A stretch of DNA of 49,728 nucleotides from Salisapilia sapeloensis CBS 127946. Lineage: Eukaryota > Protista > Oomycota. The DNA lies in contig JAADVB010000138.1 in assembly GCA_023334545.1 (NCBI GenBank), positions 1 to 49,728 of the forward strand, read 5' to 3'. Every line of letters starts with the position of its first letter. Position 1 is the first letter of the stretch. The translations under genes were made by a program, and so were the position numbers. Under the pieces are notes generated by a model. The model was not told the DNA's origin, ran no database searches, and worked only from the letters and a program-made list of their open reading frames with translations. Positions 15,502 to 32,369 of this stretch are shown here, piece by piece.

Positions 15502-18500
15502 ATGACTAGTCGCAGGTCGCTCACGAGCACAGGACACGGCGAAGGCGGAAGCCCTCCTAGGGAAAGCGACGCAGTCTACATGACAGAGGCGCTAGAGACC
15601 CAGCGGCAGATGTGTGACGAGGCCATGGACCTCGTCAACCGTGGCGTGGCGCTCCAGAACGCCACGCCGCCCAATGCCCGAGACGCGGAATCCACACTCG
15701 CACGTGCCGTCGAGATCATGGAACAGGCGCTGTCGATACGGTACGGATCGGCAGAAGAGAGGGAAGCTGCCCAGCGTCTGAATAACAAGATGCTTCGGTA
15801 CGTCAAGATGATTAAAAGTCAGCGTAATAAGCAGTCTGCCGTCGGGGGACCAGGCAAGACGAAGCGCTCGGTCGTCAAGCACAACGTATTGGAGATGGAA
15901 CGACCACCGGAAGTGTACGCTCCGTTGGTCCAGATGATGCACAACTCGCCTACGCTAGGTGACATTTGTGCCAGTCTCAAGCGCACCTTTGGCTTCCAAG
16001 AAGGCAACGTGCTGAATCAAAAGGAGCATCTGATCATGCTCTTGACGAATTTCAAAGAGCGTGGGGAAGAAGACGAAGGGAAGAAGAAAAAGAAGAAGAA
16101 GAAGAATCCGACGGAAGAGGAAGCCATGGCGGATTATGAACGTCAGCGTGACCCTCAGTTGGAGATGGAGATGGCGTCCAAGGCAGTCAAAGCCATGCAC
16201 GTTCGCGTCTTTGATAACTACACTAAGTGGTGCAAGTACGTTGGTCAGAAGCCAAAGTTCACGAACGATCCGCTGGTAGACATATCCCTCTTCTTCCTTA
16301 TTTGGGGTGAAGCAGGCAACTTTCGTCAGACGCCAGAACTCCTCTGCTTCTTGCTCCACAACATGCTTCCTATGGCCACGAGCGGCGGGTCCCAGGAGCC
16401 TGGATATTTCTTGGAAACGACCATCCGTCCGATGTACTTAGAAATGAAGCGTGACAATGACAAGAAGACGTCCAAGGGCGCACGTGCCGGTCACGGTCAG
16501 ATCCGTAACTACGACGACATCAATGAGTTCTTTTGGAGCAAAAAGTGTCTCAAGTACAATCTCGAGACGATCGGCCAGGCGTTTGGCACGTACGACAAGA
16601 AGGGTCGTCCGAAGGTCGTGAAGAAGACGTTTCGGGAGAAGCGTAGTTGGTTCCGAGCCATTTTGTCTTTCCGTCGTATATTCTTTTTCAACTGTGCTCT
16701 GTTCATGGCGACACTTGGCTTTGCGATGAACATGGTCCTCATGTGTCCAGACAGTCCGATCATGTACGGCGAGGACATCCAGCCTCTGCAAACAACTGAC
16801 GTGTTCTCAATTCTTGGTCACAAGTATGCTCAGCCGACGCCGGAAGACGGTCTTCCACAAAACGAAGATGATGAGATTACATTTGATCCGGATGCGAAAG
16901 ACGGATGTCTGCCTGCTCGTCTCGCTTCTTGTCTCGGTGTCGAGTACTTTGTCGAAGGAGACACGTTCAGTACGTTGCCAATCGACTTCAAGACGCTGCT
17001 GCAGGTCGTGCCGTTCACGGACTGTCTGAGTAAGCAAGTGGGCCGCTGCAGTTGCTACCACGACACGATCAACAAGTGCTTTGAGCAGTCCGGTACGGCC
17101 GACATGATCGACCCTGACACGCTCGCAGCATCCGAAGTAACGTACGATCAGAGCAAGTGTCTTCCGGACTGGAAGAAGCGTGTGGAACAGATTCTGGACG
17201 ACAATGACGACGGGTACTTGAACTGCAAACAGTGCAGCATCGATCCGTCGAGTCTAATCTCCGATCCTATGCGTCTCGTTCAGATGTTTCAAGGTATCAT
17301 TGACTTTGGACGTAAGGACATGGGTGTCTTGTGCATGGGTTTCGGCGTTGCGTTCCTAGTCCTATTTTGCGTCTTGGAGCTACAGAACCGTTTCTTCAGT
17401 GGCTTTGGCATTGGTTTCACTGGTCGTAAACTGCCTCTTCCGATCTCGATCTGGTGCAGGAACATTGGCTTTTGGATCATTCTGTTGATCATCAAATTGA
17501 TCTTTGACTATCAATTCGTCATCAAGAGTCTAGTCGAGACGTCGTTCTTCATCTGGAACGCAGATGAAGACGACTACCTTCAGTACTCGCACTTTATGAT
17601 CCAGTTCTCTTTCCACAACATTGCCTTCTTGCTCTTCTTGTGGGTCCCTGCATGGGTCGTCTTCATGTACGACGCACAGATCTTTTACTCGATCTTATCC
17701 GTCATCTACGGTTCATTCACGGGTTTCAACCTTCGCATTGGTGAACTTCGGTCGTTCCGTATCTTGCGACTGACGTTCAAGTCGATCCCGGGCGTCTTTA
17801 ACAAGAAGATTGTACCGAATATCCTCGAGACGGAGCAAAAGAAGAAGCGAAGGAAGAAGAAGGATAACAAGTCGGGTCCAGATGACGTTGCCATGCCCGT
17901 ACGTCGCTTTGAACGCGTGTCCATGTCCCAAGGCTCCAAGCCCTTGACGGTCAAGGCTGTCAAGTACAGTAGTCTGTTGGAGCAACGAGAAGACGATGTG
18001 TATAGCGAGATGCGGACGCCGAACGCCGGAGAGGACGAGACGTCTTCTCAAGTGAGTCGATCGTCCCACATGGGCTCCATCACTGGTGTCGCTGGTGCCG
18101 AGTTTGAACGCACGATTCCATTCGCCATGGCCTGGAACCGTTGTCTCGCGAGTCTGCGTGAAGCGGATGTGATCAGCGACCGAGAGCTGAATGTGCTGAG
18201 CTACTTGATTGACAGTAAAGACACGTCTGGTCGAAAGTTATACCCGCCTGCGTTCCTCACGGCTGGCAAGTTGGACGAATCGATTGACATTGTCTTGGAG
18301 TGTGCTGCCTTGTACGATAAACTCAAGACGGATAAGAAGAAGAAGGACAAGACGTTGCAAAAGATTGAAGTGACGATGCGCGAGCGTCTGATTAAGGACG
18401 ACTTGCGGATGGAATCGATCATTGGATCGTACAAGTTCTCGTCTCAAGTGCTGCGTATCCTTCTCGGAGATGAACATAAGGAGCTGGATGACTGCTTTGC

Positions 18501-21500
18501 CTTCATGGAAGAGATGGTTGCGAATAAACAAGTGCTCAAGGCATTGAATCTTGGCAACTTGTACCAGACACGCGCGGCGTTGGCAGAACTGATGAAATCC
18601 ATCCTTGAAGTGCCAAAGAAGTCGACGGAATCGAGCATCAAGTTCCAACGCGCGCTGTACAAGGTGATTGACTCGGTCGAGAACGTCATTGGATGCCTCA
18701 AGGTCATGCTCGGCAAGCAAGAGACGCTCGTGCAGATCCTGAACGACACGCCTTTGAAACCGAACTCGTTCTTCTTCCCTGGAGACGGACAGTACTATGC
18801 CAGTCTTCAGCTGCAGAAGATTGTCAACTCGGAAGCAGCTCTGGATATTGTCTCTCGAGCCTACCAATTGCTTACGGTGGACAACTTTGATGCCGAACCA
18901 AGGTCGGAGGAAGGACGTCGACGTCTTCGATTCTTTGCCAACTCGCTCTTTATGAGTATGCCAGAAGCACAGCCGATTCGAAAGATGCACTCCCTCACGG
19001 TGTCGACACCGTACTATAGCGAAATTGTCATGTACTCGATCAAGGACTTGACCACCGTCAACGACGACAGTGTCAAGCTTCTCTATTACCTCCAGACAGT
19101 CTACGAGTACGAGTGGGAGAACTTGCTGGAGCGTATTGGCGCCAAGGACATTGCCGAGGCGTTAAAGAAGCACCCGGAAGAGGTGCAGCTGTGGGCTAGT
19201 TACCGAGGTCAGACGCTTGCGAGAACTGTGCGTGGTATGATGTACAATGAGGACGCCATCCGGTTCCTCCACTGGCTCGAGATTGGTGAAAACGAAGTCA
19301 TGCACCAGTACGGATGTCCGTGCAACAAGTGCAAGCGTCTGGATGAGATGGTTGCGCTTAAGTTCAACTACGTCTGTACGTGTCAGATCTATGGCAAGCA
19401 AAAGGACGAACAGAAGCAACAGGCGACGGACATTGACTTTTTACTCAAGAAACACCCGAGTCTGCGTGTGGCCTATGTCGATGGACCGAAGAAGGTCAAG
19501 GACGGCCCGCCCAAGTTCTTTTCGGTGCTCGTACGCTCTGTGGAAGACAAGGTGCAGGAGATCTATCGTGTGGAACTCCCGGGTGACCCGATCATTGGAG
19601 AAGGTAAGCCGGAAAACCAGAACCACGCCATCATCTTCTCTCGTGGTGAGCTCCTCCAATGTATCGATATGAACCAAGATGGGTACTTCGAGGAATGTCT
19701 TAAGATGCCCAACTTACTCGCGACCATGGATGACCACAAGGACAAGCGCCCGTTGACGATCATTGGTTTCCGTGAACACGTTTTCACGGGCGGTGTCTCC
19801 AACTTGGCTAGTTTCATGTCCATTCAGGAACTGTCCTTCGTGTCGCTTGGTCAACGTATGCTCGCTCGATTCAGCGTCCGTCAGCACTATGGTCACCCCG
19901 ATATCTTCGACAAGCTCTTCGCTATGACGACGGGAGGTACTGCCAAGGCTTCCAAGGGTATCAACCTGTCAGAAGATATTTTTGCCGGTTTCAACACGAC
20001 GCTACGTGGTGGACGTGTCTCTCACGAAGAGTTCATCCAAGTCGGCAAGGGCCGTGATGTCGGTATGCAACAACTGGCGCAGTTCGAGGCCAAGCTGTCG
20101 TCTGGTGCCGGTGAGTGTGTCGTGTCTCGCGATGCCATGCGTATGGCTTCTCGTCTTGACTTCTTCCGTCTCCAGTCGTGGTTCTACGGTAACTTGGGAT
20201 GGTACTTTACCCAGACGCTAACTGTTATCGGTATCTACTTCTTCATCTACGGTAAAGTGTACATGGCCCTAAGTGGTATGGACGAGTACTTCCTCAGCCA
20301 CGGTGGCATTGGTATCGGAGGTACGTTGAACACTTCGTGGGCGTTCCAGTTCGGCTTCCTGCTTGTGATCCCTGTCATTGCCGTCGTCGGTGTCGAACGT
20401 GGTTTCCGACACGGATTCTCGTACTTGCTATGGAACTGTCTAACGCTCGGTCCGGTCTTCTTTACCTTCCAAATGGGTACTCGTATGCACTACTTCGACC
20501 GTACGCTCATTCACGGTGGTGCCAGATACCGTGCCACCGGTCGTGGTTTCACGATCAAGCACGAGAAGTTCGCTGAGCTCTTCCGATTCTACGCTTTCAC
20601 ACACTTTTACCGTGGTGTCGAGTTAGTCTTCCTGCTGATTTTGTTTGCTGCCTACGGAACGTTCTCTTGGTGCAATTGTTCATGGCGACTGGATGAAGAC
20701 TTTTACCAGAATGTCCAGCCGTCTGCACTCGAATGGAAGACGCGATGCTATGCCAACCACTACCAGACGTGTGTGCTCCCGACGAACCAGAACTATGGCA
20801 TTATGTCCTTCTCTCTGTGGATCATTGCTGCAACCTGGCTATGGGCTCCGTTCTTCTTCAACCCGAGCGGATTGGACTGGGACAAGGTCATCGAAGACTA
20901 CACGGACTGGCAGAACTGGCTCAAGACGACGAACGACTCGGCCGAGTCGTGGTTTGGCTGGTGGTCGAGCGACTTGGAGTACCTCGAACACTCTTCGTTC
21001 GGCGCGCGCTTCTTTTCCATGCTGCGCAAGACTCGCTTCTTGCTACTGGCGCTTGGTATCTACCTCCAACTAGCTTACAAGGCGTACTTTGAGAACCAGA
21101 ACAGGGTCATTACGGCCGATGACAACATGGTGACGTACATTCTGGCAGCCACGGTCATTGTCATCTTCGTCTTGCTCGTCTGCGGAGGCTATATGGCGAG
21201 TCGGATAACCAAGAAGATGTCCATGAAGCAACGCAAGCTTCGAAAGACGAAGTTCCTGCTCACGTGTCTGCTGCTGCTCATTGCCTTTGTCAGTCTGACG
21301 GTGCTCACCATTGCCAACGTGCTCGAATGCATCCTCATTCTGATGCTCGCGACGTACTGGTTCATGCAGTTGTGTATCTACCGACTGCAGTACCACCACA
21401 TTGTCGTGCGAGCGCTTGCTCGAGCATACGACCGTTTCGTTGGCTGGATCGTCTTCGGCCCCATACTCTTCATCGCCATGTTCCTCCCGTTCATTAGCTC

Positions 21501-21645
21501 CTTCCAACAGCGTGTGATGTTCAACAGCGCCTTCACTGCCGGCATGGAAGTGTCCAAACTGTTTTCACACGAAGCCGCGCCGACGCAGCAAGTGGTCAAG
21601 GTGAAGCGGGTGAAGAACAAGAAGAAGGACAAGCACGCAGAGTAG
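15502..21645 (+). CDS. FKS1: 1,3-beta-glucan (callose) synthase, GT48; 2047 aa, single exon
   Basis: FKS1 domain (FLIWGEAGNFRQTPELLCF) and glucan synthase motifs (QLWASYRGQTLARTVRGMM, GEGKPENQNHA, IDMNQD, HYGHPDIFD, SEDIFAG, QVGKGRDVG, YRATGRGF); many TM helices. Confidence 0.97.
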   Translation: MTSRRSLTSTGHGEGGSPPRESDAVYMTEALETQRQMCDEAMDLVNRGVALQNATPPNARDAESTLARAVEIMEQALSIRYGSAEEREAAQRLNNKMLRYVKMIKSQRNKQSAVGGPGKTKRSVVKHNVLEMERPPEVYAPLVQMMHNSPTLGDICASLKRTFGFQEGNVLNQKEHLIMLLTNFKERGEEDEGKKKKKKKKNPTEEEAMADYERQRDPQLEMEMASKAVKAMHVRVFDNYTKWCKYVGQKPKFTNDPLVDISLFFLIWGEAGNFRQTPELLCFLLHNMLPMATSGGSQEPGYFLETTIRPMYLEMKRDNDKKTSKGARAGHGQIRNYDDINEFFWSKKCLKYNLETIGQAFGTYDKKGRPKVVKKTFREKRSWFRAILSFRRIFFFNCALFMATLGFAMNMVLMCPDSPIMYGEDIQPLQTTDVFSILGHKYAQPTPEDGLPQNEDDEITFDPDAKDGCLPARLASCLGVEYFVEGDTFSTLPIDFKTLLQVVPFTDCLSKQVGRCSCYHDTINKCFEQSGTADMIDPDTLAASEVTYDQSKCLPDWKKRVEQILDDNDDGYLNCKQCSIDPSSLISDPMRLVQMFQGIIDFGRKDMGVLCMGFGVAFLVLFCVLELQNRFFSGFGIGFTGRKLPLPISIWCRNIGFWIILLIIKLIFDYQFVIKSLVETSFFIWNADEDDYLQYSHFMIQFSFHNIAFLLFLWVPAWVVFMYDAQIFYSILSVIYGSFTGFNLRIGELRSFRILRLTFKSIPGVFNKKIVPNILETEQKKKRRKKKDNKSGPDDVAMPVRRFERVSMSQGSKPLTVKAVKYSSLLEQREDDVYSEMRTPNAGEDETSSQVSRSSHMGSITGVAGAEFERTIPFAMAWNRCLASLREADVISDRELNVLSYLIDSKDTSGRKLYPPAFLTAGKLDESIDIVLECAALYDKLKTDKKKKDKTLQKIEVTMRERLIKDDLRMESIIGSYKFSSQVLRILLGDEHKELDDCFAFMEEMVANKQVLKALNLGNLYQTRAALAELMKSILEVPKKSTESSIKFQRALYKVIDSVENVIGCLKVMLGKQETLVQILNDTPLKPNSFFFPGDGQYYASLQLQKIVNSEAALDIVSRAYQLLTVDNFDAEPRSEEGRRRLRFFANSLFMSMPEAQPIRKMHSLTVSTPYYSEIVMYSIKDLTTVNDDSVKLLYYLQTVYEYEWENLLERIGAKDIAEALKKHPEEVQLWASYRGQTLARTVRGMMYNEDAIRFLHWLEIGENEVMHQYGCPCNKCKRLDEMVALKFNYVCTCQIYGKQKDEQKQQATDIDFLLKKHPSLRVAYVDGPKKVKDGPPKFFSVLVRSVEDKVQEIYRVELPGDPIIGEGKPENQNHAIIFSRGELLQCIDMNQDGYFEECLKMPNLLATMDDHKDKRPLTIIGFREHVFTGGVSNLASFMSIQELSFVSLGQRMLARFSVRQHYGHPDIFDKLFAMTTGGTAKASKGINLSEDIFAGFNTTLRGGRVSHEEFIQVGKGRDVGMQQLAQFEAKLSSGAGECVVSRDAMRMASRLDFFRLQSWFYGNLGWYFTQTLTVIGIYFFIYGKVYMALSGMDEYFLSHGGIGIGGTLNTSWAFQFGFLLVIPVIAVVGVERGFRHGFSYLLWNCLTLGPVFFTFQMGTRMHYFDRTLIHGGARYRATGRGFTIKHEKFAELFRFYAFTHFYRGVELVFLLILFAAYGTFSWCNCSWRLDEDFYQNVQPSALEWKTRCYANHYQTCVLPTNQNYGIMSFSLWIIAATWLWAPFFFNPSGLDWDKVIEDYTDWQNWLKTTNDSAESWFGWWSSDLEYLEHSSFGARFFSMLRKTRFLLLALGIYLQLAYKAYFENQNRVITADDNMVTYILAATVIVIFVLLVCGGYMASRITKKMSMKQRKLRKTKFLLTCLLLLIAFVSLTVLTIANVLECILILMLATYWFMQLCIYRLQYHHIVVRALARAYDRFVGWIVFGPILFIAMFLPFISSFQQRVMFNSAFTAGMEVSKLFSHEAAPTQQVVKVKRVKNKKKDKHAE

Positions 21646-21867: not shown

Positions 21868-24800
21868 TTACTGCATGGACGAGAGCTCAGGAGTGGACAC
21901 GACGTGTCGAATGCCAAACTCGTCCGAAGAGGTCGAAGCTACAGATGACGCTCGACTTCGCGAGTCCGGACCAGGGGATGTGGTCAATGGCGAAGATGGA
22001 ACGTGCAAGCTGTCCGCATGAGGTCGTCCTTTTCGAGCAACAGGGTCGGCACTTGCAGGTGGTCGGGAATGGTGCACTCGAGGCGGAGATGCCAGCAATT
22101 GCGCAAGCTTAGCTCCGTCCGGTTGAAATTTAGTCAAGTCTACATGACGATAGGCTCGATTAACCTTGTACCCGGGTACGACATCGGCCTTGCCCATCTC
22201 TGCCAAGGAAGACGAGACAGACTTGCTGCGTCGTTCCAAAATTGCCTCCTTGTCGGCATCGTTCAGTGTCCGATGTGACTTTGTACTCTTTAACCCTTGC
22301 TTGCTATCGTTCGATGGCGTCGTCTGTCGATTCTTGTCTTCCGAGCTTTCAGACGTAGTGTCACTGCTTTCTTCGGCCTTGGCTTCCTGTTCTGCCTTGT
22401 AAAGCCTGTTGTATTCCGACAAGGTGTCGTCAAAGTCCGGGTCTTCATCGTTATCTAGGTCAATGCCAAGCGCACTGGATCTGTCCATGGATCGCGATGC
22501 TTGACTCATACTATGCGCAACAGAGCTGTCGATCGCTCGCATCCACTGCTCTTGACGACCCCACGTATCCAACAAGACGATGAAACTCTTGTACCCCTTT
22601 GTCGAGAATTGAATGCCATGCGCACCACTACCAGGTCCGGCCGTAACTCCGAACGAGTACCACTTTCGAACCGCAGTCGGCACCACCCACTTCATACGCG
22701 TCGCCCAGTTCGGACTCTGCAACGTATCGCAATACCATAGCTTATCGCACTTGCGACACAATCCGACAAAGGTGAGTGTAAACGTTAGAGCGTGGAATGG
22801 CATCGGGACTGGGAACTGGACAAAGGAACTGACGTGCGTCGGCTCGGGAATCGGCACGTGATCGTGGATCTTATCCTTCTTGTACAAGAAGCCTGTCAAA
22901 AAGTCATCGTCATTCTCAATCTTGCAATAGTGCGAAGGTGCACCAGAGAAGAGCGTCTCCAAGTACCCTTGGAACGCCACTTGAGTGCTCGACAGAGCTT
23001 CTTGGACGTGTTCAATCGCAAACTCCTTGAGTTTAAAGCAAGCGTTGCACACTGGCGCATTGCGCTGACCCAGTGGCTGCATCTCTCGCGCGTTCTGGTC
23101 TGCCAATGTCTGACCGAACGCTTGCCACGCAGCATGCTGCTGCGTGTACTGACGCACTACTTCCTGTACCGTCAACGCCGTGCCGTTGTGCGTATCCGGC
23201 GTATTCGTGAGCGTAAAGATACTATTGGCGATCGTAGTCATGTGACCCTTGTACTGTGCGTGTCCTTCATACGCTTTCATAACAAAGTCCAGTAGATTGC
23301 TATCGTCCGCGAAGAGTGCGTTTAAGAGTGGACACATGGGCAGACGCTTCTGATCTGGATTCATCAGAACGAAGCGGATGACGTCTGTGAGCTCATGATG
23401 AAGCAGACTGTTGCTCTTCTGATAGCCATAGCAAGCGAGGAAGCATGGCATGAGCCCACCATTTGCCAGCAATTCATCCAACTGCCCGCTCTGGAGGAAG
23501 ACACAGCGCTTGAGGAATGCTATGATGGACAAGAGTGTCGTACCCGTCGCTTCCAAGCGTTGATTATCGTTGGCACTTGTCTCCTTCATGACAACCAATC
23601 GACACAGTTCGACAAACTTGTCGACACGAGGGATGAGAGCAAACAAGAGAACAGTGTGGACGCTCTTGAGCAGACTTTCGACGCCGGTAAAGTCTCGACG
23701 ACGACGATGGTATCCCAATTGACTCATGAGCATCATGACAACAGACAGTGCACCTGCTTCATGCACCACAAGCGACTGAGGCTGCTCACACTGTCGCTTG
23801 AGCTCGGCATACCCTAGATCAATCAACGTCTCAAACGTGACGTGAGAAGATTCGAGTAGGAAGACAAGTAAAGATCGCAGGAGCGTATTATGTCGATGAG
23901 GATAGTGCTGGTCTGTAATCAACGGCAACGAGTTGTCCGTATTGTCCACGAACGTCACGACCGAGCCGAGCATGTAGACCGACGGCGGGTACAAGATGTA
24001 GTTAAGCACGGCACAAATGTTCTCGACCGTATCACGCTGGTAAGGTGTCCCGACGCCCCAGCTCATGGTGCGTTGGAGAGAGTAGAGTCGGTCGAAGAGA
24101 CAGTCGAGACACTTGCTCTTCTGCAGGTTCTCCTGCCCTTGCTCTGTCAAGTCTGAATACAGGAGCCACACGAGCGTATCTCGGATGGTGTCCATGCCCA
24201 CGTGTCTCACCAGCCACGGCATGACAAACTGTCCATCATGCGCTAGGAAATGGAGGAAGAGTCCCCCAAGCTGTTCTGTCAATAAAAAGTGGTGGATGAC
24301 TTTGCAGAAGAGGACGAGGAGAACTTCATCCAAAGGACCTGGTTGACAGATGAAGCTAAAGAGTACTTTGAGGTAGTTGGCAGATTCGCGTAGGTCAATG
24401 TCATCCAAAGACTCGGGCGACTCGGTCGCATTGGACGATCTGTTCTTCATAAAGATGCGACGTGTATACGAGAAAGCGATTTCACTGCAAAAGTGCTGGA
24501 CCTTGTACTTGCCATAATACGGATCATCAGGTAGGTTGAGTCCGTTCTCAGACGCAGGGAGTGTGAGTAGTCGAAACACTTCATAGATGACCGTCGGTTG
24601 TTCCAACCACTTTTGTGTGTTCGGATCACGAGATAGTTCGTGCTGTAGAATGTCCACCGACACGTGTCCTCCTTTTGTAATCAACAACAAGTCATGCAGT
24701 GATGCATCCGACTTGCTCATGGATTCTTCAATCCGTCGTCGATGTTCCTTTACCGACTCACTCTCAGCACGCTCTCGAAGCAAATCCTCGATCTCCGTGT

Positions 24801-26056
24801 AGTCTGTCGTGTGCGCAATCTCCTGCGCTGTCTTGCCTTCCGGATCCTTTGCATCCAGTCTCGTACCAGCGTCTATAAGTAGACGTACGCACTCTAGATT
24901 GCCTGCTCGAGCAGCCTCCATGAGCGCTGTGGTGCCGTTCGGGCTCTCAAGATCCAACTCTGCGCCGCTACCCAAAAGAATGGCAACACAGTCCTCGAAA
25001 CCACCTCTCGCGGCAATGTGTAGCGCCGTCATGCCTCGAGTCCTGTTGCGAGAGAGGTTGACACGAGCTCCTTTTCGAGCGAGTAGCTTCAAGCACTTGG
25101 TCTGACCGTCTCGAGCAGCAAACATAAGCGCTGTCATGCCATGGACGTCCTCCAGGTCGAGATTAGCGCCAAACAGCAGAAGTGCTCTCAATGCTTCAAT
25201 GTTGCCGACAGAAGCTGCAACCATGAGTGCACTCGTGCCATTGGGTTTCTGTTCATCTGGTGAAAGTCCAAACGCTTGTAGCACTTCCAAGCAGTCCACA
25301 TGGCCTTGCTCTGCTGCTTCACACAAGGCAGCGGCCTTAGGTAATCGCTAGAAAAAGAATAGTCATAAGTATAAAGTTAATTCGAAAGAAAGAGATCGTG
25401 TATCTTACTTCGAGAACTGCTCCGGAAGGATCGGAGAAGAGGAGGCTCGTGAGGAGGCTGACATCTCCTGCCCGTGCGGCGGACGGGACGGCACAGTAGA
25501 CATCATCTGGAACGATGTGCTGCATCGCATCGTCGCCAGTCAGCAGCTCGATCTTGACACGCGTCGGCTGCTCTTGTAGCAACCGGTCTGCGTGTGTCTT
25601 GGACAAGAGCACGACTGGTACAGGCACAGTCTGTCTCCCAGACGAGTGGAAACCATCGAATAGAGAATGCTCCTTGGCAGACTCCTCTGTGCGCTCAATA
25701 AAGATACAACCGACGGCGCCGGCCTGGACTACCTTCCGAACGATGTCGGGAAAGTGAACTCGACCCCCTCTTTCAACGACAGCTATGCAACCAAGTAGCT
25801 GAGACCTGTTCACGATCGGCCCGTCGGCTTTTGGCGGATCTGTAAACACGATCGTGGACGTAACGCTACGTCGTGCTTTATCGTATCGATAGCTAGATGC
25901 CTCAGCAAAGTGGTAGTTTTTATCTCCCTTTGCTGTCGCTGACTGACTATCAAGGGCATTAGGGGCATGGTTGAGAGACGCTCTCCACGAGACAAAGTAG
26001 ACACCAATGCTGTGGGAGCTCTTGCGCGAGTTTGGCGCAGACGACGTGTTGCCCAT
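21868..26056 (-). CDS. Multidomain protein: MGNTSS N-terminus, PA domain, ankyrin repeats, SAPS/PP6R-like domain and PH-like domain; at least 2 exons
   Basis: Exon 1 (25409-26056) has a PA motif (GCIAVVERGGRVHFPDIVRKVVQAGAVGCIF...VPVVLLSKTHADRL). Intron 25348-25408. Exon 2 has about 6 ankyrin repeats (GTSALMVAA, GMTALMFAA, GMTALHIAA, GTTALMEAA), SAPS-like segments and a late PH-like block (GFLYKK...QEQWMRAIDS). Confidence 0.88.
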
Positions 26057-26421
26057 GTATGGCACTTATACGAGATTTTTAAGAATAAGAAGTCTCGAGT
26101 GTGGTGTCCGTGGGAAGAATATATAGAATCGAATCAGACGCGAAGTCGAGGGTGTAGCTACTGCTTGGTACACCACGAAAGAAGTATCTGTGACGTAATG
26201 AGGTAAGATCTAGGTGGTACATCACCGGAACACTCATGGTCCGAAGCTCATCTTCGTCATTTCGTCTCCTCTGAGACGTTTCTCGCCCTGCGTAGCGCAT
26301 GATGATGGGCTTCATACGCCAGATGATATGTAGGAAAGTATCATTGAATTGAATGCATATCGAAAGGATGTTTATGTGCTCTACGTGACGTGAGATCGAC
26401 GTTCATGTATTCGGCACATGC

Positions 26422-29400
26422 TCATCCGTCTCGAGTAGTGTCTTCTGGACTAGAGATACTAGGTACTCGCAACGGCGTAGATGGAGTTGGCGACGGTGCT
26501 GTACCGAACAAGGACCAGACGCCGCCAAGTAATCCTGCGTTCGCAGTCGCTTCCTCCGTCGCTCGCTCTTGCTCCTGCTGCAGTCTATCGACTTCTTCCG
26601 GTGTGAACTGGAGTAAGCTCGCTAGCACTGGTATCAACGCATCTTTCTCTACTTGCTTGTGACTAGATAAGAACTTGATCATGACGTTCTTCAAGTACTC
26701 CATATTCAAAGACGCAGGACTTTGGTCTCCCAATTGCTCCAACCTCTTTGCCTCGTTCCGTGCCTTTTGCAACGACTCACACACTTCGTCATACTGCCGT
26801 CGATACTTTTTCACTTGGCTCTCCAGCTCTTTCATCGCAGCTTGACTACCATCATCCACAGGTTCCGTCTGCACTTGCGTCGTACTCGTCTCCACTTGCT
26901 GTCGACTAGTTTGCAAAGTCTCCGTCAGCTCTTGCTCTCTCGACCGGAGTGCCTCCACTTTGGCTCGACACTCTCTCAGTTTCTTCTGCAGCTGTTCACT
27001 CTCGCGTCTCCACTCGTCCTTATCATGTTCCACGCCTTCCATACTCTTTTCCAATTCCTTCCTCTCCTCTTCCTTTGCCTCCACCTCCTTCTTCACGTCC
27101 TTCAGCTGCACGACAAAGTCCTCTTCCAGCGTCTTCACATGCTTTTCATGTTCCACTTGTGCCTGCTCCCACTGTCGCTGCATCTCTTCCAACTGTCCAG
27201 CTAACTCCTGGATACGACCACCCATCTGCTCCTCCGCTCGTTCCTTTTCTCCCAAAGCTTCATCCGCGTGCTTCTTACTCACTCGACTTTCGTCCGAAGC
27301 CTTCTTCAACGCCGTGCGAGCTCTCTTCCGATACACTTCTAATGCGACACGAGCATCTTCTGCTTCTTGACTCTTGGTCTCTAGTTCCTGTCGTAACGCT
27401 TCGTAAGCATTCGAAGCTTCCGTCTGATCAGACTTTTCTGCTACAAGCTTTTCAATCGTACTCCTGGCTTCCGACAACTTGGATTCAGCTGCTTGGAGAG
27501 ACTGCTCATGCTTTGCAACAGTCACTTCTAAAGACTTTTCGAGCTTACGGTAGCTCTCTTGACTAGATTCTAAAGACTTTTCAAGTGCACGATAGCTCTC
27601 TTGACTTGCTTCTAGCTTTTGCGAGACACGAGTCAATTCTTCTTCCATCGAGTGCACTTGCTGTGTCTTTTTCGACACTTGTTCCTCTTCCGTTTGAACT
27701 TTGTCTTTTAGCTCTTGACACGCTTGTTCCAGCTGAGTTAGTTTTTCAGAGACTGCCTTCTCTTGCTCTTTGCTAGTGGATAATTCTGTAGTTAAAGAGG
27801 TATTGGCTTTCTCTAGAACGTCCTTCTCTTGGTCCAATTGAGCTCGAAGAGCTTGGAGGCTTTCCTGACTTGATGCAGTGAGTTGAGCTAGCTCATCGTC
27901 CTTGGACTTTAGCTTCTCTTCTAACGATTGCACGCTCTCATCCAGACGTTCCTGTAGGTTGTCCAACTGCGACTTTGACCCTTCTAGCTCTTGTACTACT
28001 TGTGCCTTGGCTGATTCCAGAGCATTACGCTGCGTTTCCATCTCAGTCTTCTCCGTGTCTAGCTTGGACAGTCTCTCTTCCAACGCTTCCACCTCTTTCT
28101 TCCTATTATCACTCTCCGACAGAGCTCCATCCAGCTTGTCTTGTAGTGTCTTTCGAGCCTCCTCTTTTCCCGTCATCTCCTTATCCTTCTGATCCACCAG
28201 TTCCTTTAGCTCTTCCACCTCCTTCTTACGCTCTTCCAAAGCAGTCGTCAACGCATCCACCTTTTCCGTATCCTCCACTGGCGGTCGTTCTTCCAGCTCC
28301 TTCTCCACAGCGTTTAACCTCTCCTCTGCTGCCTCCTTCTGCTCCTTTAGCTTATTACTCTCTGCTTGCAACGCCTGGATCCTCGTCTTCCTCTCCTCCA
28401 CACTAAACTGCAGACGTTCCACACGTTTCTGCAGCCTCGTATGCTCCGCCTCCATCTCCTGTAGCTTCTCTGAAGCACTAGATCCGGCCTTCGACGCTTC
28501 TTCCTTTTCCTTCTCGGCAGTCTTCACTTTCTCCAGAGCTTCATCACGTTCCACAACAGCATCTTGACGCTGACTCTTCAAGCTTTCCACCATCTCGTCA
28601 AACAACTGCAGTCTCTTTTCATACTGCTCTCGTTCCGACGCATACTCCTCTGCTTGAGTTGACATTTGTCCTTGAGCCTGCCCGAGTTGGTCTGTCACTG
28701 ACGCTAGCTCCTGTTTACTCTCAGCCAAGTCGTCTTGGAGAGTAGAGATAGATGCCGATAGCTCCTTCATCTTGTCATCCTTACTCTCGAGTTGCTTCTG
28801 GAGCTCGTCGACTTCCTGATCCTTCCCAGCTTCTGCCAATTCAGACGTGAGTGTCGTGATACGAGCGTTCATGTCGTCGATATGATGCTGTCTATTCAGC
28901 AATTCCTTCTGCGCGTCACTCTGCTCTTGCTTTAGACGTTCCACCTCTTCCTTGGCTTTTATACAAGACGCTTCCAACGCCCCCTTCTCATGCCCTAAAG
29001 TCTTGACTTGTTGCTCCAAGTCTTTCACATTGGATTGAGACGACTCTAACGACGTTTGGAGCTTACTCTTGTGTTTCTCCAACGTCTGCATCTTGGCATT
29101 TACATCCGTCAGCTGTTTCTGGACGTCACTGAGTTCCGATCGAAGAGTTTTGGACTGTGTTTCCAAGGCCTCTACTTCACTTTCCATCGACTCTTTCTCC
29201 TCAACTAGCTGTCGCTTATCAGCTTCCAGTTGCTCCATCTGGGTAAAGTGGACGTCACTTGCTTCACGCACACGTTCTTCCATATCCTCCAACTGTTTCT
29301 TCAGTCGAGAGATCTCAGACACTTGACTTTCACTCGTACGAGTCGTGTCACGTAGTGTTGTTGCTAACTTTTGCTCGAGCTCTTTCTTTTCCTCTACCAG

Positions 29401-32369
29401 TTGCTGCTTCTCACCTGTCACATCACGCACCTGTGTCTCCAGGTCTTGGATTAAAGCATCTAGCTTTTCCTTATCGTACGAACTATTCGACTGAGCATCC
29501 GCTAGGCTTGTCGTGACACTTGCCAACTCCGATTCGACGCTTGCCAGTTTAGTCTCTAGCACGCTCTTCTCCTTTTCCAAACTCTCCATCGCTTCCTCTT
29601 TCGTAGCAATGTCTTTGTCTTTCGACTCCATATCTGACTCGAGACTTGCGACAGTCTCCTTCAACTCAACTACTTGCGCCATTAATTGCTTCTTCTCTTC
29701 TCCCAAGTCGTCCAACTTTTTCTCCAATTCCTCCACCGTCGCCTTCAACTCGTTCACTTCCAACTCCTTCTTTTCCATCATAGCCTGAGACGCTTCCACC
29801 TCTTTCTCCACCTCTACCTTCGCTTCCACGACCTTGTCCATTTCTTGGCTCTTCTCCTTGAGCTCATCCTTGAGCTGTTGAATCAACTGTCCACTAACAA
29901 GCACCTTTCGTTGCAAGCCAAGAGCTTCCTGCCGATGCTCTTCACTACGCGCCTTCTCTTCCTCCGTTATCTTTCGAAGTTCACTGACCGTGCCCTCCAT
30001 CTCCTCCATCATGTCGCTCTTCTCTTGCTTTACCTCTGCCACTTTATCCGCCATTTCATTCAACTGCTCTTCTAGCTCTTCCTGACTCGCGCCTTGTGCT
30101 TCCTGCAGCCTCTCCTTTTCCTCCTCCGCTTCTTGCAACTGTTCCTGCAAGTTCCCAATCTCTCTCGACAATCGATTCTGTTGCTCTCGATACATCTCGG
30201 CAGTGGATTTGAGACCATTGATCTCCAACTGCTTTTCCTCCACACTTCCCTCCTTTTCACTCAACTTTTCACGCAACCTACTTCGCTCTTCAATCAAGTC
30301 CTGCGTCTGTGTCTGGAGCTCATTCACCTGCTGCTCGTACCACTCCAACTTGCTTCCATCTTCCGTCCCTTCGCTCCGACGATGCGTCTCTTCCAACGCA
30401 GCCCGAAGCGACTTAGCTTCTTCATTCTTCTCCTTCGCATCCGTCTCTAGATTCGAAATGTATGCATAAGCTTCATGCAGTTTCTTTTCTAGAGACAAGA
30501 GTTCAGATAGTGCGCCATGGAACTCCTTCTTCTCTTCCTCCGTGACGATACTGGAAGATCCAGTGGTCATATTCGACGTGTCAAGTGCTGGTGACAGTGG
30601 TTTGGCAGCTAACTCTGCTAGCTTCTGTCTCAACTTGGTCAGTTGCTCGTCTTGAGACGCAAAATCGGAACGTGCTTGGAGAGATGATTCAGCAGTCTCT
30701 GCTTCCGACTCTCGACGACTATTGCGAGTGTCTTCATCACGTTGACGCAAGAGGTCGTTTACACGTTCTTCCAATGCATCAATTTCGTGCCTTGCTTCTT
30801 CCAATTGCTCCTGAAGAAGATCCTTGTCTTTCATAAGAGTCTCTAGTTGTTCCTGTAGATCGAACTTTTCTTGTTCGAGACGAGAAGAGTCAGACTGGAT
30901 GGTTTCTACCTCTTGCTTTAGACGATCGAGCTCCGCATTCGACTTGCCATCCTTTCGGACTTGCTGCTCTTCCTGGTCTTGACGTAGTTTCACCACTTCG
31001 TCTGTCGCCTTGGCCACTTCAAACGTCATACGGACATTTTCTGCTTTAATAGCTGCCATCTCTTCTTCCATCTCGGACATCTGCTTATCCGAGTCTGTCG
31101 TGTCGGTTGATCCATTCTGAGCTTTTGTACTAGCAAAAGCTTCACTCCACTGACGATAGGCTTCATGAAGGTCTTGAATCGTTTTCATACTTTCGTATGA
31201 AGCTTGACTTTCTGCATCCAAGTCACTAAGCCACTGAATCTGAGCGTCCATGGTAGACTTTAACGCATCATGTACACTCTCAAGGTCCTTTTCAACTCGA
31301 GTATCTAGTGGTAGCGATGTGGAATCATTCCCCTGATCAAATGACAAGGGAAGTGTATGGATTTGCTCCATGAACTTGGTCAAAGTTGACTGCTGCTTTT
31401 CCTCCTCTTCCTTTAATACGTCACTCAACCTTTTCAATTCCTCCGATTGCGACTGTAAATAGGATTGGACACTAGCCACAGACGTTCCAGCTCCTGCCTC
31501 TTCCAATGCCTCTTTCATACGAACGAGATCCTCTATTTCCTCACTACCTGCGCTTTGGTCCAATTGATCTTGCAGCTTTTGTTTCTCACGCATAATGCCA
31601 TTCAATTGAGAAGCAATTTCTGTATAAGCAGATTCATTCTTCTCCTGCTGGTCCTGTAACTCATCCAGTTGGACTTGTAAAGCCGACACTTTCGAATCCT
31701 TACTCTTGCCTTCCCGCTCAAGCACTTGAATGCGTTCATCCTTTTCCTTTGATTTATTCTCATGCTCCTCTTCCAAGGCACGCATCTTGTGCTGCAGCCG
31801 GTCATTCTCATCCTGCATTACAGCAGCCTTGGCTTCTTCCTGTGCCAACTGCGCTTCAAACGCTTCCAGCTTTGAAGATAAGCTGGAGACCTGCTCTTGA
31901 GACTCCGCATATGCTCTATCCTTGCTCTGGAGCTCGCTCTGGAGATCTTGGCAGCGCTGATTGACATCTTCAAGCTGCTTCATAAGTGTATCTCGTTCGT
32001 TCTCAGCTTCAGACAGCTTTTTCGACAATTCCTCCGTGGATTTATCGTTCGTAGAAGCGTCTGGAGACTTGTCGGAACTTTTCAATTGTTCATTTTCCTC
32101 TCTTGCAATGCGCAATTGCGTCTGCATCGCTCGGCAAGTACTCACGACATGCTTCAGCTTGTCAATAAGTTCCTGCTTTTCTCTTTCAAGACGCTGAATG
32201 TCGGATTCTTGTCCATTTTCACCATTTCCATTCGAAGCTACACGAGTACAAAGCACATAATGTCAATTCCATGGACTCGATTGATGCATATAGCAATATA
32301 TAGTGATAAAGAGAGGTAGGAGACACTAGCGAACGTACATGGAGAGCTCTTGTTTGTCTCCTTGTCCAT
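26422..32369 (-). CDS. GRIP-domain golgin, about 1950-aa coiled-coil protein; 2 exons
   Basis: E/K/Q/L-rich heptads throughout; C-terminal GRIP motif NMEYLKNVMIKFL...LIPVLASLLQFTPEE. Exon 1 is 32339-32369 (MDKETNKSSP), intron 32238-32338. Confidence 0.92.
27526..27609 (-). repeat. 42-bp coding tandem duplication (2 x 14 aa, two heptads) in the golgin
   Basis: SQESYRALEKSLES / SQESYRKLEKSLEV; the two 42-nt units at 27526-27567 and 27568-27609 are near-identical. Confidence 0.85.

What the first reader, a model, noticed from the sequence alone, without database searches (positions are those of the whole stretch)
21868..26056. Ankyrin repeats fused to a SAPS/PP6R-like domain in one protein, with myristoylation motif, PA and PH domains: possible single-chain, membrane-targeted PP6 regulatory module
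Seen: after about 6 ankyrin repeats there are segments tracking SAPS-family hallmarks: KYKVQHFCSEI, LKVLFSFICQPGPLDEVLLVLFCKVIHHFL, FVMPWLVRHVGMDTIRDTLVWLL, KSNSLLHHELTDVIRFVL and QYKGHMTTIANSI (human PP6R has GYMGHLTRIAN). Established: the animal PP6 holoenzyme is PP6c plus a SAPS subunit (PP6R1-3) plus a separate ankyrin subunit (ANKRD28/44/52), and the yeast Sit4 SAPs are stand-alone proteins. Inference: a Rosetta-stone-like fusion of the two regulatory subunit types. The MGNTSS start (MGxxxS myristoylation consensus), a PA domain and a PH-like domain would add lipid and ligand targeting. I do not know of this architecture having been characterised.
Basis: partly seen in the sequence, partly recalled or inferred. 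Interest (0 to 1): 0.8.

Follow-up and report, generated by a model that had tools for sequence, protein, structure and literature searches.

The report
Oomycete ankyrin–SAPS phosphatase-regulator fusion protein
This is a real, expressed two-exon oomycete gene whose 1375-residue product joins a lipid-anchor motif, a PA domain, seven ankyrin repeats, a complete but divergent SAPS (PP6/Sit4 phosphatase-regulator) domain and a PH-like domain; no paper describing it was found, and it is probably a membrane-tethered phosphatase-6 regulator.

Summary
The gene lies on the minus strand: exon 1 is 26056-25409, the intron is 25408-25348, and exon 2 is 25347-21868. RNA contigs from four runs (two samples) carry exactly the predicted 61-nt splice, and one transcript covers all the domains.

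- **PA and ankyrin domains:** both pass Pfam's own thresholds.
- **SAPS region:** it is weak in Pfam for this protein alone (20-24 bits against a cutoff of 25.6), but it is a full-length SAPS domain.
  - Profile-profile comparison with canonical PP6R proteins gives 99.7% probability, E 2.5e-25.
  - The AlphaFold model (pLDDT 84) has PP6R1-3, Ekc1 and SAP155/185/190 as its top Swiss-Prot matches (TM about 0.6). Other ARM proteins score 0.28 or less.
- **PH-like domain:** supported only at fold level. It carries invariant CxxC pairs that suggest a zinc site.
- **N-terminus:** the MGNxxS start is conserved across oomycetes.

The family occurs throughout oomycetes. It sits beside three other SAPS+PH/FYVE/SnoaL families; this scan already noted two of those architectures elsewhere in this genome.

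Not shown: PP6c binding, myristoylation, lipid binding, or any specific kinship of the seven consensus-type ankyrin repeats with ANKRD28/44/52. The "Rosetta-stone" reading therefore remains an analogy. Verdict: a new variant of a known kind, of moderate interest.

The parts
26039..26056 (-). Start codon and MGNTSS N-terminus (N-myristoylation-type motif: G2, N3, S6)
   Evidence: It is the first ATG of the transcript. M1 and G2 are invariant and N3 and S6 nearly invariant in 18 oomycete homologues.
25580..25807 (-). PA (protease-associated) domain core, exon-1 residues 84-159
   Evidence: Pfam PF02225, E 6.2e-8, 33.1 bits against a cutoff of 23.9. The ERGGRVHFPD and GFHSSGRQ motifs are invariant in the family. 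No PDB sequence relative at E<=1. There is no hydrophobic signal-like N-terminus, so it is presumably cytosolic.
25409..25495 (-). Degenerate first ankyrin repeat (capping repeat), which runs across the intron
   Evidence: An AARAGDVxLLxxLL pattern that is conserved in homologues.
25348..25408 (-). 61-nt GT..AG intron
   Evidence: Read from the sequence. RNA contigs of runs X2-X5 skip exactly 25348-25408. Homologues read straight through the junction, and the Albugo gene model carries 14 extra residues exactly there.
24772..25347 (-). Six consensus-type ankyrin repeats (exon-2 residues 1-192)
   Evidence: Pfam Ank_2 E 4.2e-34, Ank E 8.6e-28. The best PDB sequence matches are ankyrin-1/2, NOMPC and DARPins.
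23053..24735 (-). Complete, divergent SAPS domain (exon-2 residues 205-765), all-alpha ARM-like solenoid
   Evidence: hhalign against canonical PP6R: 99.66% probability, E 2.5e-25, profile columns 1-567 against 22-506. AlphaFold model pLDDT 84, pTM 0.83. The top 15 Swiss-Prot fold matches are all PP6R/SAP proteins, TM 0.50-0.62. Pfam SAPS hits 18 of 18 family members, best E 1.1e-10. An exhaustive profile search recovers canonical PP6R proteins.
23038..23049 (-). Invariant CxxC (exon-2 C767, C770) at the start of the helix that links SAPS to the PH-like domain
   Evidence: Invariant columns in 18 sequences. It may form a Zn site with C864/C867/C873 and invariant histidines; this is inference.
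22492..22902 (-). PH-like beta-sandwich with C-terminal helix (exon-2 residues 816-952). It carries an invariant insert of about 30 residues after strand 1 and a second invariant CxxC (C864, C867).
   Evidence: It is the most conserved part of the protein (81% mean column identity). The model has seven strands plus a helix but pLDDT of only 49. Nearly all of the top 50 PDB fold matches are PH domains or chains that contain one, with weak E-values of 0.01 or more. hhalign to the Pfam-recognised PH domain of oomycete SAPS paralogues gives 69-78%. No Pfam PH hit.
21871..22491 (-). Ser/Pro-rich, poorly conserved tail that ends in a conserved C-terminal motif (RHVVSTP-type, last 16 residues at 21871-21918)
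   Evidence: Alignment A1 shows low conservation here except for a (L/V)DL(K/T)xFQPD block and the terminal motif.
21868..21870 (-). Stop codon
   Evidence: ORF list.

Best explanation
The locus encodes an oomycete-wide, single-chain member of the SAPS family of PP6/Sit4 phosphatase regulatory subunits. Shown: one spliced transcript encodes, in order, an MGNxxS start, a PA domain, 7 ankyrin repeats, a conserved linker helix, a full-length SAPS solenoid, a CxxC-containing helix, a PH-fold domain and a disordered tail. Inferred: the SAPS solenoid docks the PP6 catalytic subunit as canonical SAPS domains do. An N-terminal myristate, together with the PH-like (possibly Zn-stabilised) module, holds the complex on a membrane. 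The ankyrin and PA modules, rigidly joined to the N-terminus of the SAPS domain, select substrates or partners. This would be functionally analogous to, but not demonstrably homologous with, the separate ankyrin subunits of the animal PP6 holoenzyme.
For: Gene model and expression. Domains. SAPS homology by four independent routes: Pfam on all 18 family members; an exhaustive profile search that recovers canonical PP6R from animals, a choanoflagellate, Chlamydomonas, Euglena and Percolomonas at whole-library E of 1e-7 to 1e-3; profile-profile comparison at 99.66%, E 2.5e-25 over the whole domain; and fold search in which PP6R1-3, Ekc1, C. elegans PP6R and SAP190/185/155 take ranks 1-15 and 18 at TM 0.50-0.62, while the best non-SAPS ARM/HEAT protein reaches 0.28. 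The hallmark motifs pair up in the hhalign alignment (LFxFL...PLNPLLAxFFxKV, HIGTxSIxDLL, WNNxLHxQVE, GYMGHxTxIAN). The SAPS region of human PP6R3 (residues 1-513) is sufficient to bind PP6c (PMC2765987). The MGNxxS start is conserved across Saprolegniales, Albuginales, Pythiales and Peronosporales. PH fold. The three other oomycete SAPS families also carry PH or FYVE lipid-binding modules, so membrane coupling is a recurrent theme.
Against: No direct evidence for PP6c binding. Identity to canonical SAPS is only 15-20%, and the window's own protein is below Pfam's gathering score. In the tree all four oomycete families lie outside a well-supported canonical clade, which fits neofunctionalisation. 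The acidic loop residues implicated in PP6c binding in human PP6R3 (E204/205, E259/262) fall in loops that cannot be aligned reliably, and they are only partly acidic here. The PH-like domain has no Pfam hit, a low-confidence model and no canonical phosphoinositide-binding signature. PA domains are normally luminal or extracellular, so the role of a cytosolic one is unclear.
Confidence: 0.55

Rival explanations
1. This is a SAPS-derived scaffold that no longer regulates PP6. The solenoid was kept as a generic ARM-like protein-binding platform in a membrane-associated adaptor (PA, ANK and PH do the work), or it now binds another PPP catalytic subunit such as PP4c or PP2Ac.
For: Divergence is high and the Pfam score is sub-threshold. 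All four oomycete SAPS-like families fall outside the canonical clade. The paralogues match each other's profile better than the canonical profile. The mapped PP6c-binding acidic residues are not clearly conserved.
Against: The hallmark SAPS motifs and the complete domain are retained under strong purifying selection across all oomycete orders. The fold search returns only PP6R/SAP proteins and no PP4R3 or PP2A-A among the good matches.
Confidence: 0.3
2. This is a true Rosetta-stone fusion. The ankyrin block would be the orthologue of the animal ANKRD28/44/52 PP6 subunits, fused to its SAPS partner, implying that the ANK-SAPS partnership predates the animal-stramenopile split.
For: Both module types are found in one chain and are conserved together. 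One metagenomic relative also combines ANK and SAPS (P0053).
Against: There are only 7 consensus-type repeats with generic best matches, and they lie N-terminal to SAPS. No counterpart of the PP6R C-terminal ankyrin-binding region is present. A review abstract says Ankrd heterotrimers are formed 'in vertebrate species' (PMC5473023). Ankyrin repeats are among the most promiscuous fusion partners. The three paralogous oomycete SAPS families lack ANK, so ANK looks like a later addition to one SAPS-PH lineage.
Confidence: 0.1
3. This is a gene-model artefact in which two adjacent genes (PA/ANK and SAPS/PH) were read as one.
For: None beyond the a priori possibility. Some database homologues are truncated or over-merged models (767-2022 aa).
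Against: ANK, SAPS and PH share one uninterrupted 1159-codon exon. RNA contigs span everything with the single splice. Most full-length homologues have the same order.
Confidence: 0.02

Closest known systems
Canonical SAPS-domain PP6/Sit4 regulatory subunits (human PP6R1-3, S. pombe Ekc1, S. cerevisiae SAP155/185/190; Pfam PF04499)
   Same: The SAPS solenoid is full length, with the same fold (TM about 0.6), the same motif order and the same N-terminal start of the domain.
   Different: Identity is only 15-20%. It lies outside the canonical clade. It is preceded by a myristoylation-type start, PA and 7 ANK repeats, and followed by a PH-like module instead of the acidic or disordered C-terminal region. 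PP6c binding is untested.
Animal PP6 ankyrin-repeat subunits ANKRD28/44/52
   Same: Ankyrin repeats associated with a SAPS protein. Presumed role: substrate or partner recruitment.
   Different: In animals they are separate polypeptides with about 26-28 repeats that bind the C-terminal part of PP6R (my own knowledge). Here there are 7 repeats in cis, N-terminal to SAPS, and no specific sequence kinship was shown.
Other oomycete SAPS fusion families (SAPS+PH+FYVE such as P0062/P0105; SAPS+PH+SnoaL such as P0063/P0069; SAPS+PH such as P0066/P0078)
   Same: A divergent SAPS domain followed by a PH domain. They are oomycete-restricted as far as seen. They match this family's profile at E 1e-12 to 1e-26, and the PH region is detectably related.
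   Different: They lack PA and ANK and carry FYVE or SnoaL instead. Each is a separate, well-supported clade.
BTK-type PH-TH (Zn) modules, the ROCK split PH-C1 module and ZFYVE21 FYVE+PH-like proteins
   Same: A PH fold combined with Cys/His-rich, probably Zn-binding elements. These are the top fold or feature matches.
   Different: There is no sequence homology to the Btk motif or to C1. Zn binding is inferred only from invariant CxxC pairs and histidines.

Membership tests
SAPS (PF04499) PP6/Sit4 regulatory subunits | Significant sequence similarity to the SAPS domain | tested here: met
   The window's protein alone is below Pfam's gathering score (20.3-23.8 bits against 25.6). However, all 18 family members hit SAPS (best E 1.1e-10), the family profile finds canonical PP6R proteins in an exhaustive search, and hhalign gives 99.66%, E 2.5e-25 over the whole domain.
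SAPS (PF04499) PP6/Sit4 regulatory subunits | All-alpha ARM-like solenoid with the fold of PP6R/SAP proteins | tested here: met
   Model pLDDT 84, pTM 0.83. Swiss-Prot fold matches 1-15 and 18 are all PP6R/SAP proteins, TM 0.50-0.62 and covering residues 2-586; the best non-SAPS match is 0.28. The PDB holds no SAPS structure, so only generic ARM hits at TM about 0.2 appear there.
SAPS (PF04499) PP6/Sit4 regulatory subunits | Hallmark motifs in canonical order (LFxFL..PLNPLLAxFFxKV; HIGTxSIxDLL; WNNxLHxQVE; GYMGHxTxIAN; WxxF..LAxxN) | tested here: met
   All are paired by hhalign with their divergent counterparts (LFSFICQPGPLDEV..FCKV; HVGMDTIRDTLV; SNSLLHHELTD; QYKGHMTTIANSI; WQAF..LADQN).
SAPS (PF04499) PP6/Sit4 regulatory subunits | Binds the PP6/Sit4 catalytic subunit | not testable with these tools
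   There is no multimer prediction, no holoenzyme structure in the PDB, and the organism's PP6c is not in the window.
SAPS (PF04499) PP6/Sit4 regulatory subunits | Acidic loop residues needed for PP6c binding in human PP6R3 (E204/E205, E259/E262; PMC2765987) | tested here: inconclusive
   The corresponding loops align only approximately. The first holds the invariant QRDxxEN. The second has E in the family consensus but T in this protein.
ANKRD28/44/52 PP6 ankyrin subunits | Long array of about 26-28 ankyrin repeats on a separate polypeptide | tested here: not met
   There are 7 repeats, fused in cis.
ANKRD28/44/52 PP6 ankyrin subunits | Specific sequence kinship with ANKRD28/44/52 | tested here: inconclusive
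   The repeats are consensus-like, and the best PDB matches are ankyrin-1/2, NOMPC, DARPins and Kidins220. No ANKRD28-type sequence was available for comparison.
PA domain (PF02225) | Pfam match above the gathering score | tested here: met
   E 6.2e-8, 33.1 bits against 23.9.
PH domain | Sequence match to PH profiles | tested here: not met
   None of the 18 members has a Pfam PH hit at E<=10.
PH domain | Seven-stranded beta-sandwich capped by a C-terminal helix with a conserved Trp | tested here: inconclusive
   The predicted topology fits, but pLDDT is 49. Nearly all of the top 50 PDB matches are PH domains or chains that contain one, at E of 0.01 or more. hhalign to the Pfam-recognised PH of paralogues gives 69-78%. 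The Atlas feature hits are all PH, with scores of 0.80 or less.
N-myristoylated proteins | Met-Gly start with a small uncharged residue at position 3 and Ser/Thr at position 6 | tested here: met
   MGNTSS is the first AUG of the transcript. M1 and G2 are invariant and N3 and S6 nearly invariant. The modification itself cannot be tested here.

The most novel reading that the evidence does not exclude
Oomycetes may have rebuilt the regulatory side of PP6. Instead of soluble stand-alone SAPS subunits, they would use four lineage-specific SAPS families, each hard-wired to membrane-targeting modules (myristate, PH, FYVE). The PA-ANK-SAPS-PH protein would then be a single-chain equivalent of the SAPS-plus-ankyrin regulatory half of the animal holoenzyme, with a Zn-stabilised PH module as a new membrane or ligand sensor.
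Probability: 0.25. Interest if true: 0.7.

Novelty: new variant of a known kind. Interest (0 to 1): 0.5.

Why it matters
PP6/Sit4 specificity is set entirely by its regulatory subunits, and no experimental structure of a SAPS domain or a PP6 holoenzyme was found in the PDB copy searched. A natural protein that puts the SAPS solenoid, an ankyrin substrate-recruiting module and membrane anchors in one chain would be a compact model for how PP6 is targeted. It would also show that the SAPS-plus-ankyrin logic arose more than once. Because the family is conserved in all oomycete orders (which include major plant and animal pathogens) and is absent in this form from plants, animals and fungi, it is also a lineage-specific signalling component worth a knockout or localisation study.

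Tried and rejected
1. **PDB sequence search.** Searching with the SAPS-region profile found nothing relevant. The PDB fold search gave only generic ARM repeats at TM about 0.2. The PDB simply holds no SAPS structure, so this says nothing against homology.
2. **Canonical oomycete SAPS.** Two word-indexed searches with canonical SAPS alignments were meant to show whether oomycetes also keep a stand-alone canonical SAPS. The 120 rows listed were animal and other non-oomycete sequences (some unnamed), so the question stays open. An AFDB cluster hit, K3X708 (653 aa, TM 0.59), may be such a protein; from memory the accession series is Pythium ultimum, and I could not fetch it.
3. **PH domain in Pfam.** A Pfam scan of the PH-like region at E<=10 gave no hit.
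4. **PA and ANK against the PDB.** The PA domain had no hit. The ANK block gave generic hits that cannot test kinship with ANKRD28.
5. **Atlas search on exon 1.** It gave only low-score ankyrin-like leads.
6. **PP6c-binding residues.** Residue-level transfer of the PP6c-binding mutations of Guergnon et al. 2009 was abandoned because the loops do not align reliably.
7. **Deep branching order.** The order of the four oomycete SAPS families is unresolved (support 65-84).
8. **Gene-fusion artefact.** Rejected on the RNA evidence.
Full report
**Gene model and expression**

The minus strand holds a 1152-codon ORF (21868..25326) and, upstream of it, a 242-codon ORF containing MGNTSS. Reading the DNA shows a GT at 25408 and an AG ending at 25348. 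Exon 1 from the ATG at 26056 to 25409 is 648 nt. Exon 2 from 25347 to 21868 is 3480 nt including the stop. Splicing therefore gives one 1375-residue frame.

Logan contigs of four RNA runs from two samples lie on the region with no mismatches. All of them carry one joint, 25347->25409, skipping 61 nt with CT..AC on the + strand, which is GT..AG on the gene's strand.

- Three of the contigs end at 26157-26174, so the 5' UTR is about 100-118 nt.
- No ATG lies between those ends and 26056, so MGNTSS is the first AUG.
- The contigs run on at the 3' side into the convergent glucan-synthase gene, so the 3' end is not defined.

**Domains that pass curated thresholds**

Pfam finds a PA domain in exon 1 (E 6.2e-8, 33.1 bits, cutoff 23.9) and strong ankyrin repeats in exon-2 residues 8-190. 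By eye and by alignment there are seven repeats. The first is degenerate and spans the intron.

The repeats are consensus-like. Their best solved-structure matches are ankyrin-1/2, NOMPC and designed DARPins.

**Is the helical region a SAPS domain?**

For this protein alone Pfam SAPS is sub-threshold: 20.3 bits for the whole exon-2 product and 23.8 bits for the excised region, against a cutoff of 25.6. Only the C-terminal quarter of the model is matched. Four further tests settle the question.

1. All 18 aligned family members hit SAPS, with a best E of 1.1e-10.
2. A profile of the region (A2, 592 positions) was searched exhaustively against 1.84 billion representatives.
   - Besides the family itself, it finds proteins that Pfam scores as canonical SAPS at E 1e-30 to 1e-98.
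   - Where a source is recorded, these come from an annelid, a coral, an insect, a frog, a choanoflagellate, Chlamydomonas, Euglena and Percolomonas.
   - Their whole-library E-values are 1e-7 to 1e-3.
3. Profile-profile comparison with an alignment of 17 canonical SAPS domains gives 99.66% probability and E 2.5e-25.
   - It aligns columns 1-567 with 22-506, which is the whole domain, including the N-terminal part that lies before the Pfam model.
   - Every hallmark motif is paired with its counterpart.
4. An AlphaFold model of the region (pLDDT 84, pTM 0.83) was searched against Swiss-Prot models.
   - Ranks 1-15 and 18 are human, mouse, chicken and frog PP6R1-3, S. pombe Ekc1, C. elegans PP6R and yeast SAP190/185/155, at TM 0.50-0.62 over residues 2-586.
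   - The best non-SAPS ARM/HEAT protein reaches 0.28.

The PDB holds no SAPS structure, so it gives only generic ARM hits.

**The PH-like region**

Exon-2 residues 816-952 are the most conserved part of the protein, with 81% mean column identity.

- No member has a Pfam PH hit even at E<=10.
- The model is poor (pLDDT 49), although its topology is seven strands plus a C-terminal helix containing the invariant Trp.
- Nearly all of the top 50 PDB fold matches are PH domains or chains that contain one (DAPP1, BTK, AKT, PIKE split PH, CERT), but E is 0.01 or more.
- hhalign links its C-terminal half to the Pfam-recognised PH domains of paralogous oomycete SAPS proteins at 69-78%.
- Language-model features point only to PH clusters, with scores of 0.80 or less.

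I read it as a divergent PH fold with an invariant insert of about 30 residues after strand 1.

Two CxxC pairs are invariant (C767/C770, at the start of the helix that leaves the SAPS domain, and C864/C867 in a hairpin). So are C873 and H828/H830/H852/H910. This pattern suggests a structural zinc site tying the PH module to the end of the solenoid. That is inference and was not tested.

**N-terminus**

M1 and G2 are invariant, and N3 and S6 nearly invariant, in homologues from Saprolegniales, Albuginales, Pythiales and Peronosporales. This fits the N-myristoylation consensus.

There is no hydrophobic signal-like segment. The PA domain would therefore be cytosolic, which is unusual for that domain (my own knowledge).

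**Distribution and relatives**

The family is found in Phytophthora, Peronospora, Hyaloperonospora, Bremia, Plasmopara, Pythium, Globisporangium, Lagenidium, Albugo, Saprolegnia, Achlya, Thraustotheca and Aphanomyces, at 45-61% identity to the SAPS-like region of the window's protein. Database names are only "PA domain-containing protein", "Ankyrin", "Kinase D-interacting substrate" or "hypothetical". No paper on it was found.

Outside oomycetes the only close relative is one metagenomic fragment with ANK and SAPS (P0053, E 1.9e-27).

Oomycetes have three further divergent SAPS families:

- SAPS+PH+FYVE
- SAPS+PH+SnoaL
- SAPS+PH

Earlier notes of this scan report two such architectures elsewhere in this same genome (s1-296335 and s1-307830). 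I confirmed that these families exist in other oomycetes. I did not check the two loci in this genome.

In a maximum-likelihood tree each oomycete family, and the canonical clade, is separated with SH-aLRT 100. The deep order is unresolved. The paralogues match this family's profile better than the canonical one.

Whether oomycetes also keep a canonical stand-alone SAPS is unresolved. There is one lead.

**Interpretation**

The architecture is established. The function is inferred from the facts that the SAPS domain is what binds PP6c in human PP6R3 (residues 1-513 suffice) and that PP6 is described as conserved among all eukaryotes (abstract of PMC5473023).

I put about 0.55 on a membrane-tethered PP6 regulatory subunit and about 0.3 on a SAPS-derived scaffold that has changed partner.

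The Rosetta-stone claim is the weakest part, for four reasons.

- The ankyrin block is short, generic and on the opposite side of the SAPS domain from where animal ankyrin subunits bind.
- A review abstract says Ankrd heterotrimers are formed "in vertebrate species".
- The sister SAPS families lack ANK.
- Independent acquisition by one SAPS-PH lineage is therefore more economical.

The acidic residues mapped for PP6c binding could not be transferred reliably.

**Verdict**

This is a real and correctly delimited feature. It is a new architectural variant of a known family, it is visible in databases, and no paper describing it was found. Interest is moderate.

Noticed in passing
window 22438-23049 (-): Two invariant CxxC pairs (exon-2 C767/C770 and C864/C867), plus C873 and four invariant histidines, bracket the PH-like domain. 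This looks like a structural Zn site linking the end of the SAPS solenoid to the PH fold. Feature and fold matches include Zn-associated PH proteins (BTK PH-TH, ROCK PH-C1, ZFYVE21).
   Followed up: partly
window 21871-21918 (-): The otherwise unconserved Ser/Pro-rich tail ends in a motif conserved across oomycetes (RHVVSTP(D/E)L-type). A second conserved block, (L/V)DL(K/T)xFQPD, lies further upstream. These may be short linear motifs or phospho-sites.
   Followed up: no
P0062, P0105, P0060, P0064, P0061; P0063, P0069; P0066, P0078, P0090, P0077 (other oomycetes): There are three more oomycete-restricted divergent SAPS families, with PH+FYVE, PH+SnoaL or PH alone. Each is a well-supported clade. 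The scan's notes s1-296335 and s1-307830 report two of these architectures in this genome.
   Followed up: partly
window 26422-32256 (-): The upstream neighbour is a 1944-residue coiled-coil protein with a C-terminal GRIP domain (Pfam E 1.6e-15), which makes it a golgin-type trans-Golgi tether.
   Followed up: partly
window 15502-21645 (+): An FKS-type 1,3-beta-glucan synthase (Pfam E 7.6e-187) is convergent with the gene studied, with only 222 nt between the two stop codons. RNA contigs run across both genes, so either the 3' UTRs overlap or the assembler merged them.
   Followed up: no
P0030 (Albugo laibachii), residues about 200-215: The database model has 14 extra residues exactly at the position of the window's intron. 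This is probably an unspliced intron in that annotation, which would mean the intron position is conserved.
   Followed up: no
P0040 (Aphanomyces astaci, 2022 aa): This homologue carries a fungal-lipase domain and is much longer than the rest of the family. It is probably a merged gene model rather than a real architecture.
   Followed up: no
window 25409-26056 (-): The PA domain lies in a protein with a myristoylation-type start and no signal peptide, so it is presumably cytosolic. That is atypical for PA domains, and it has no PDB sequence relative at E<=1.
   Followed up: partly
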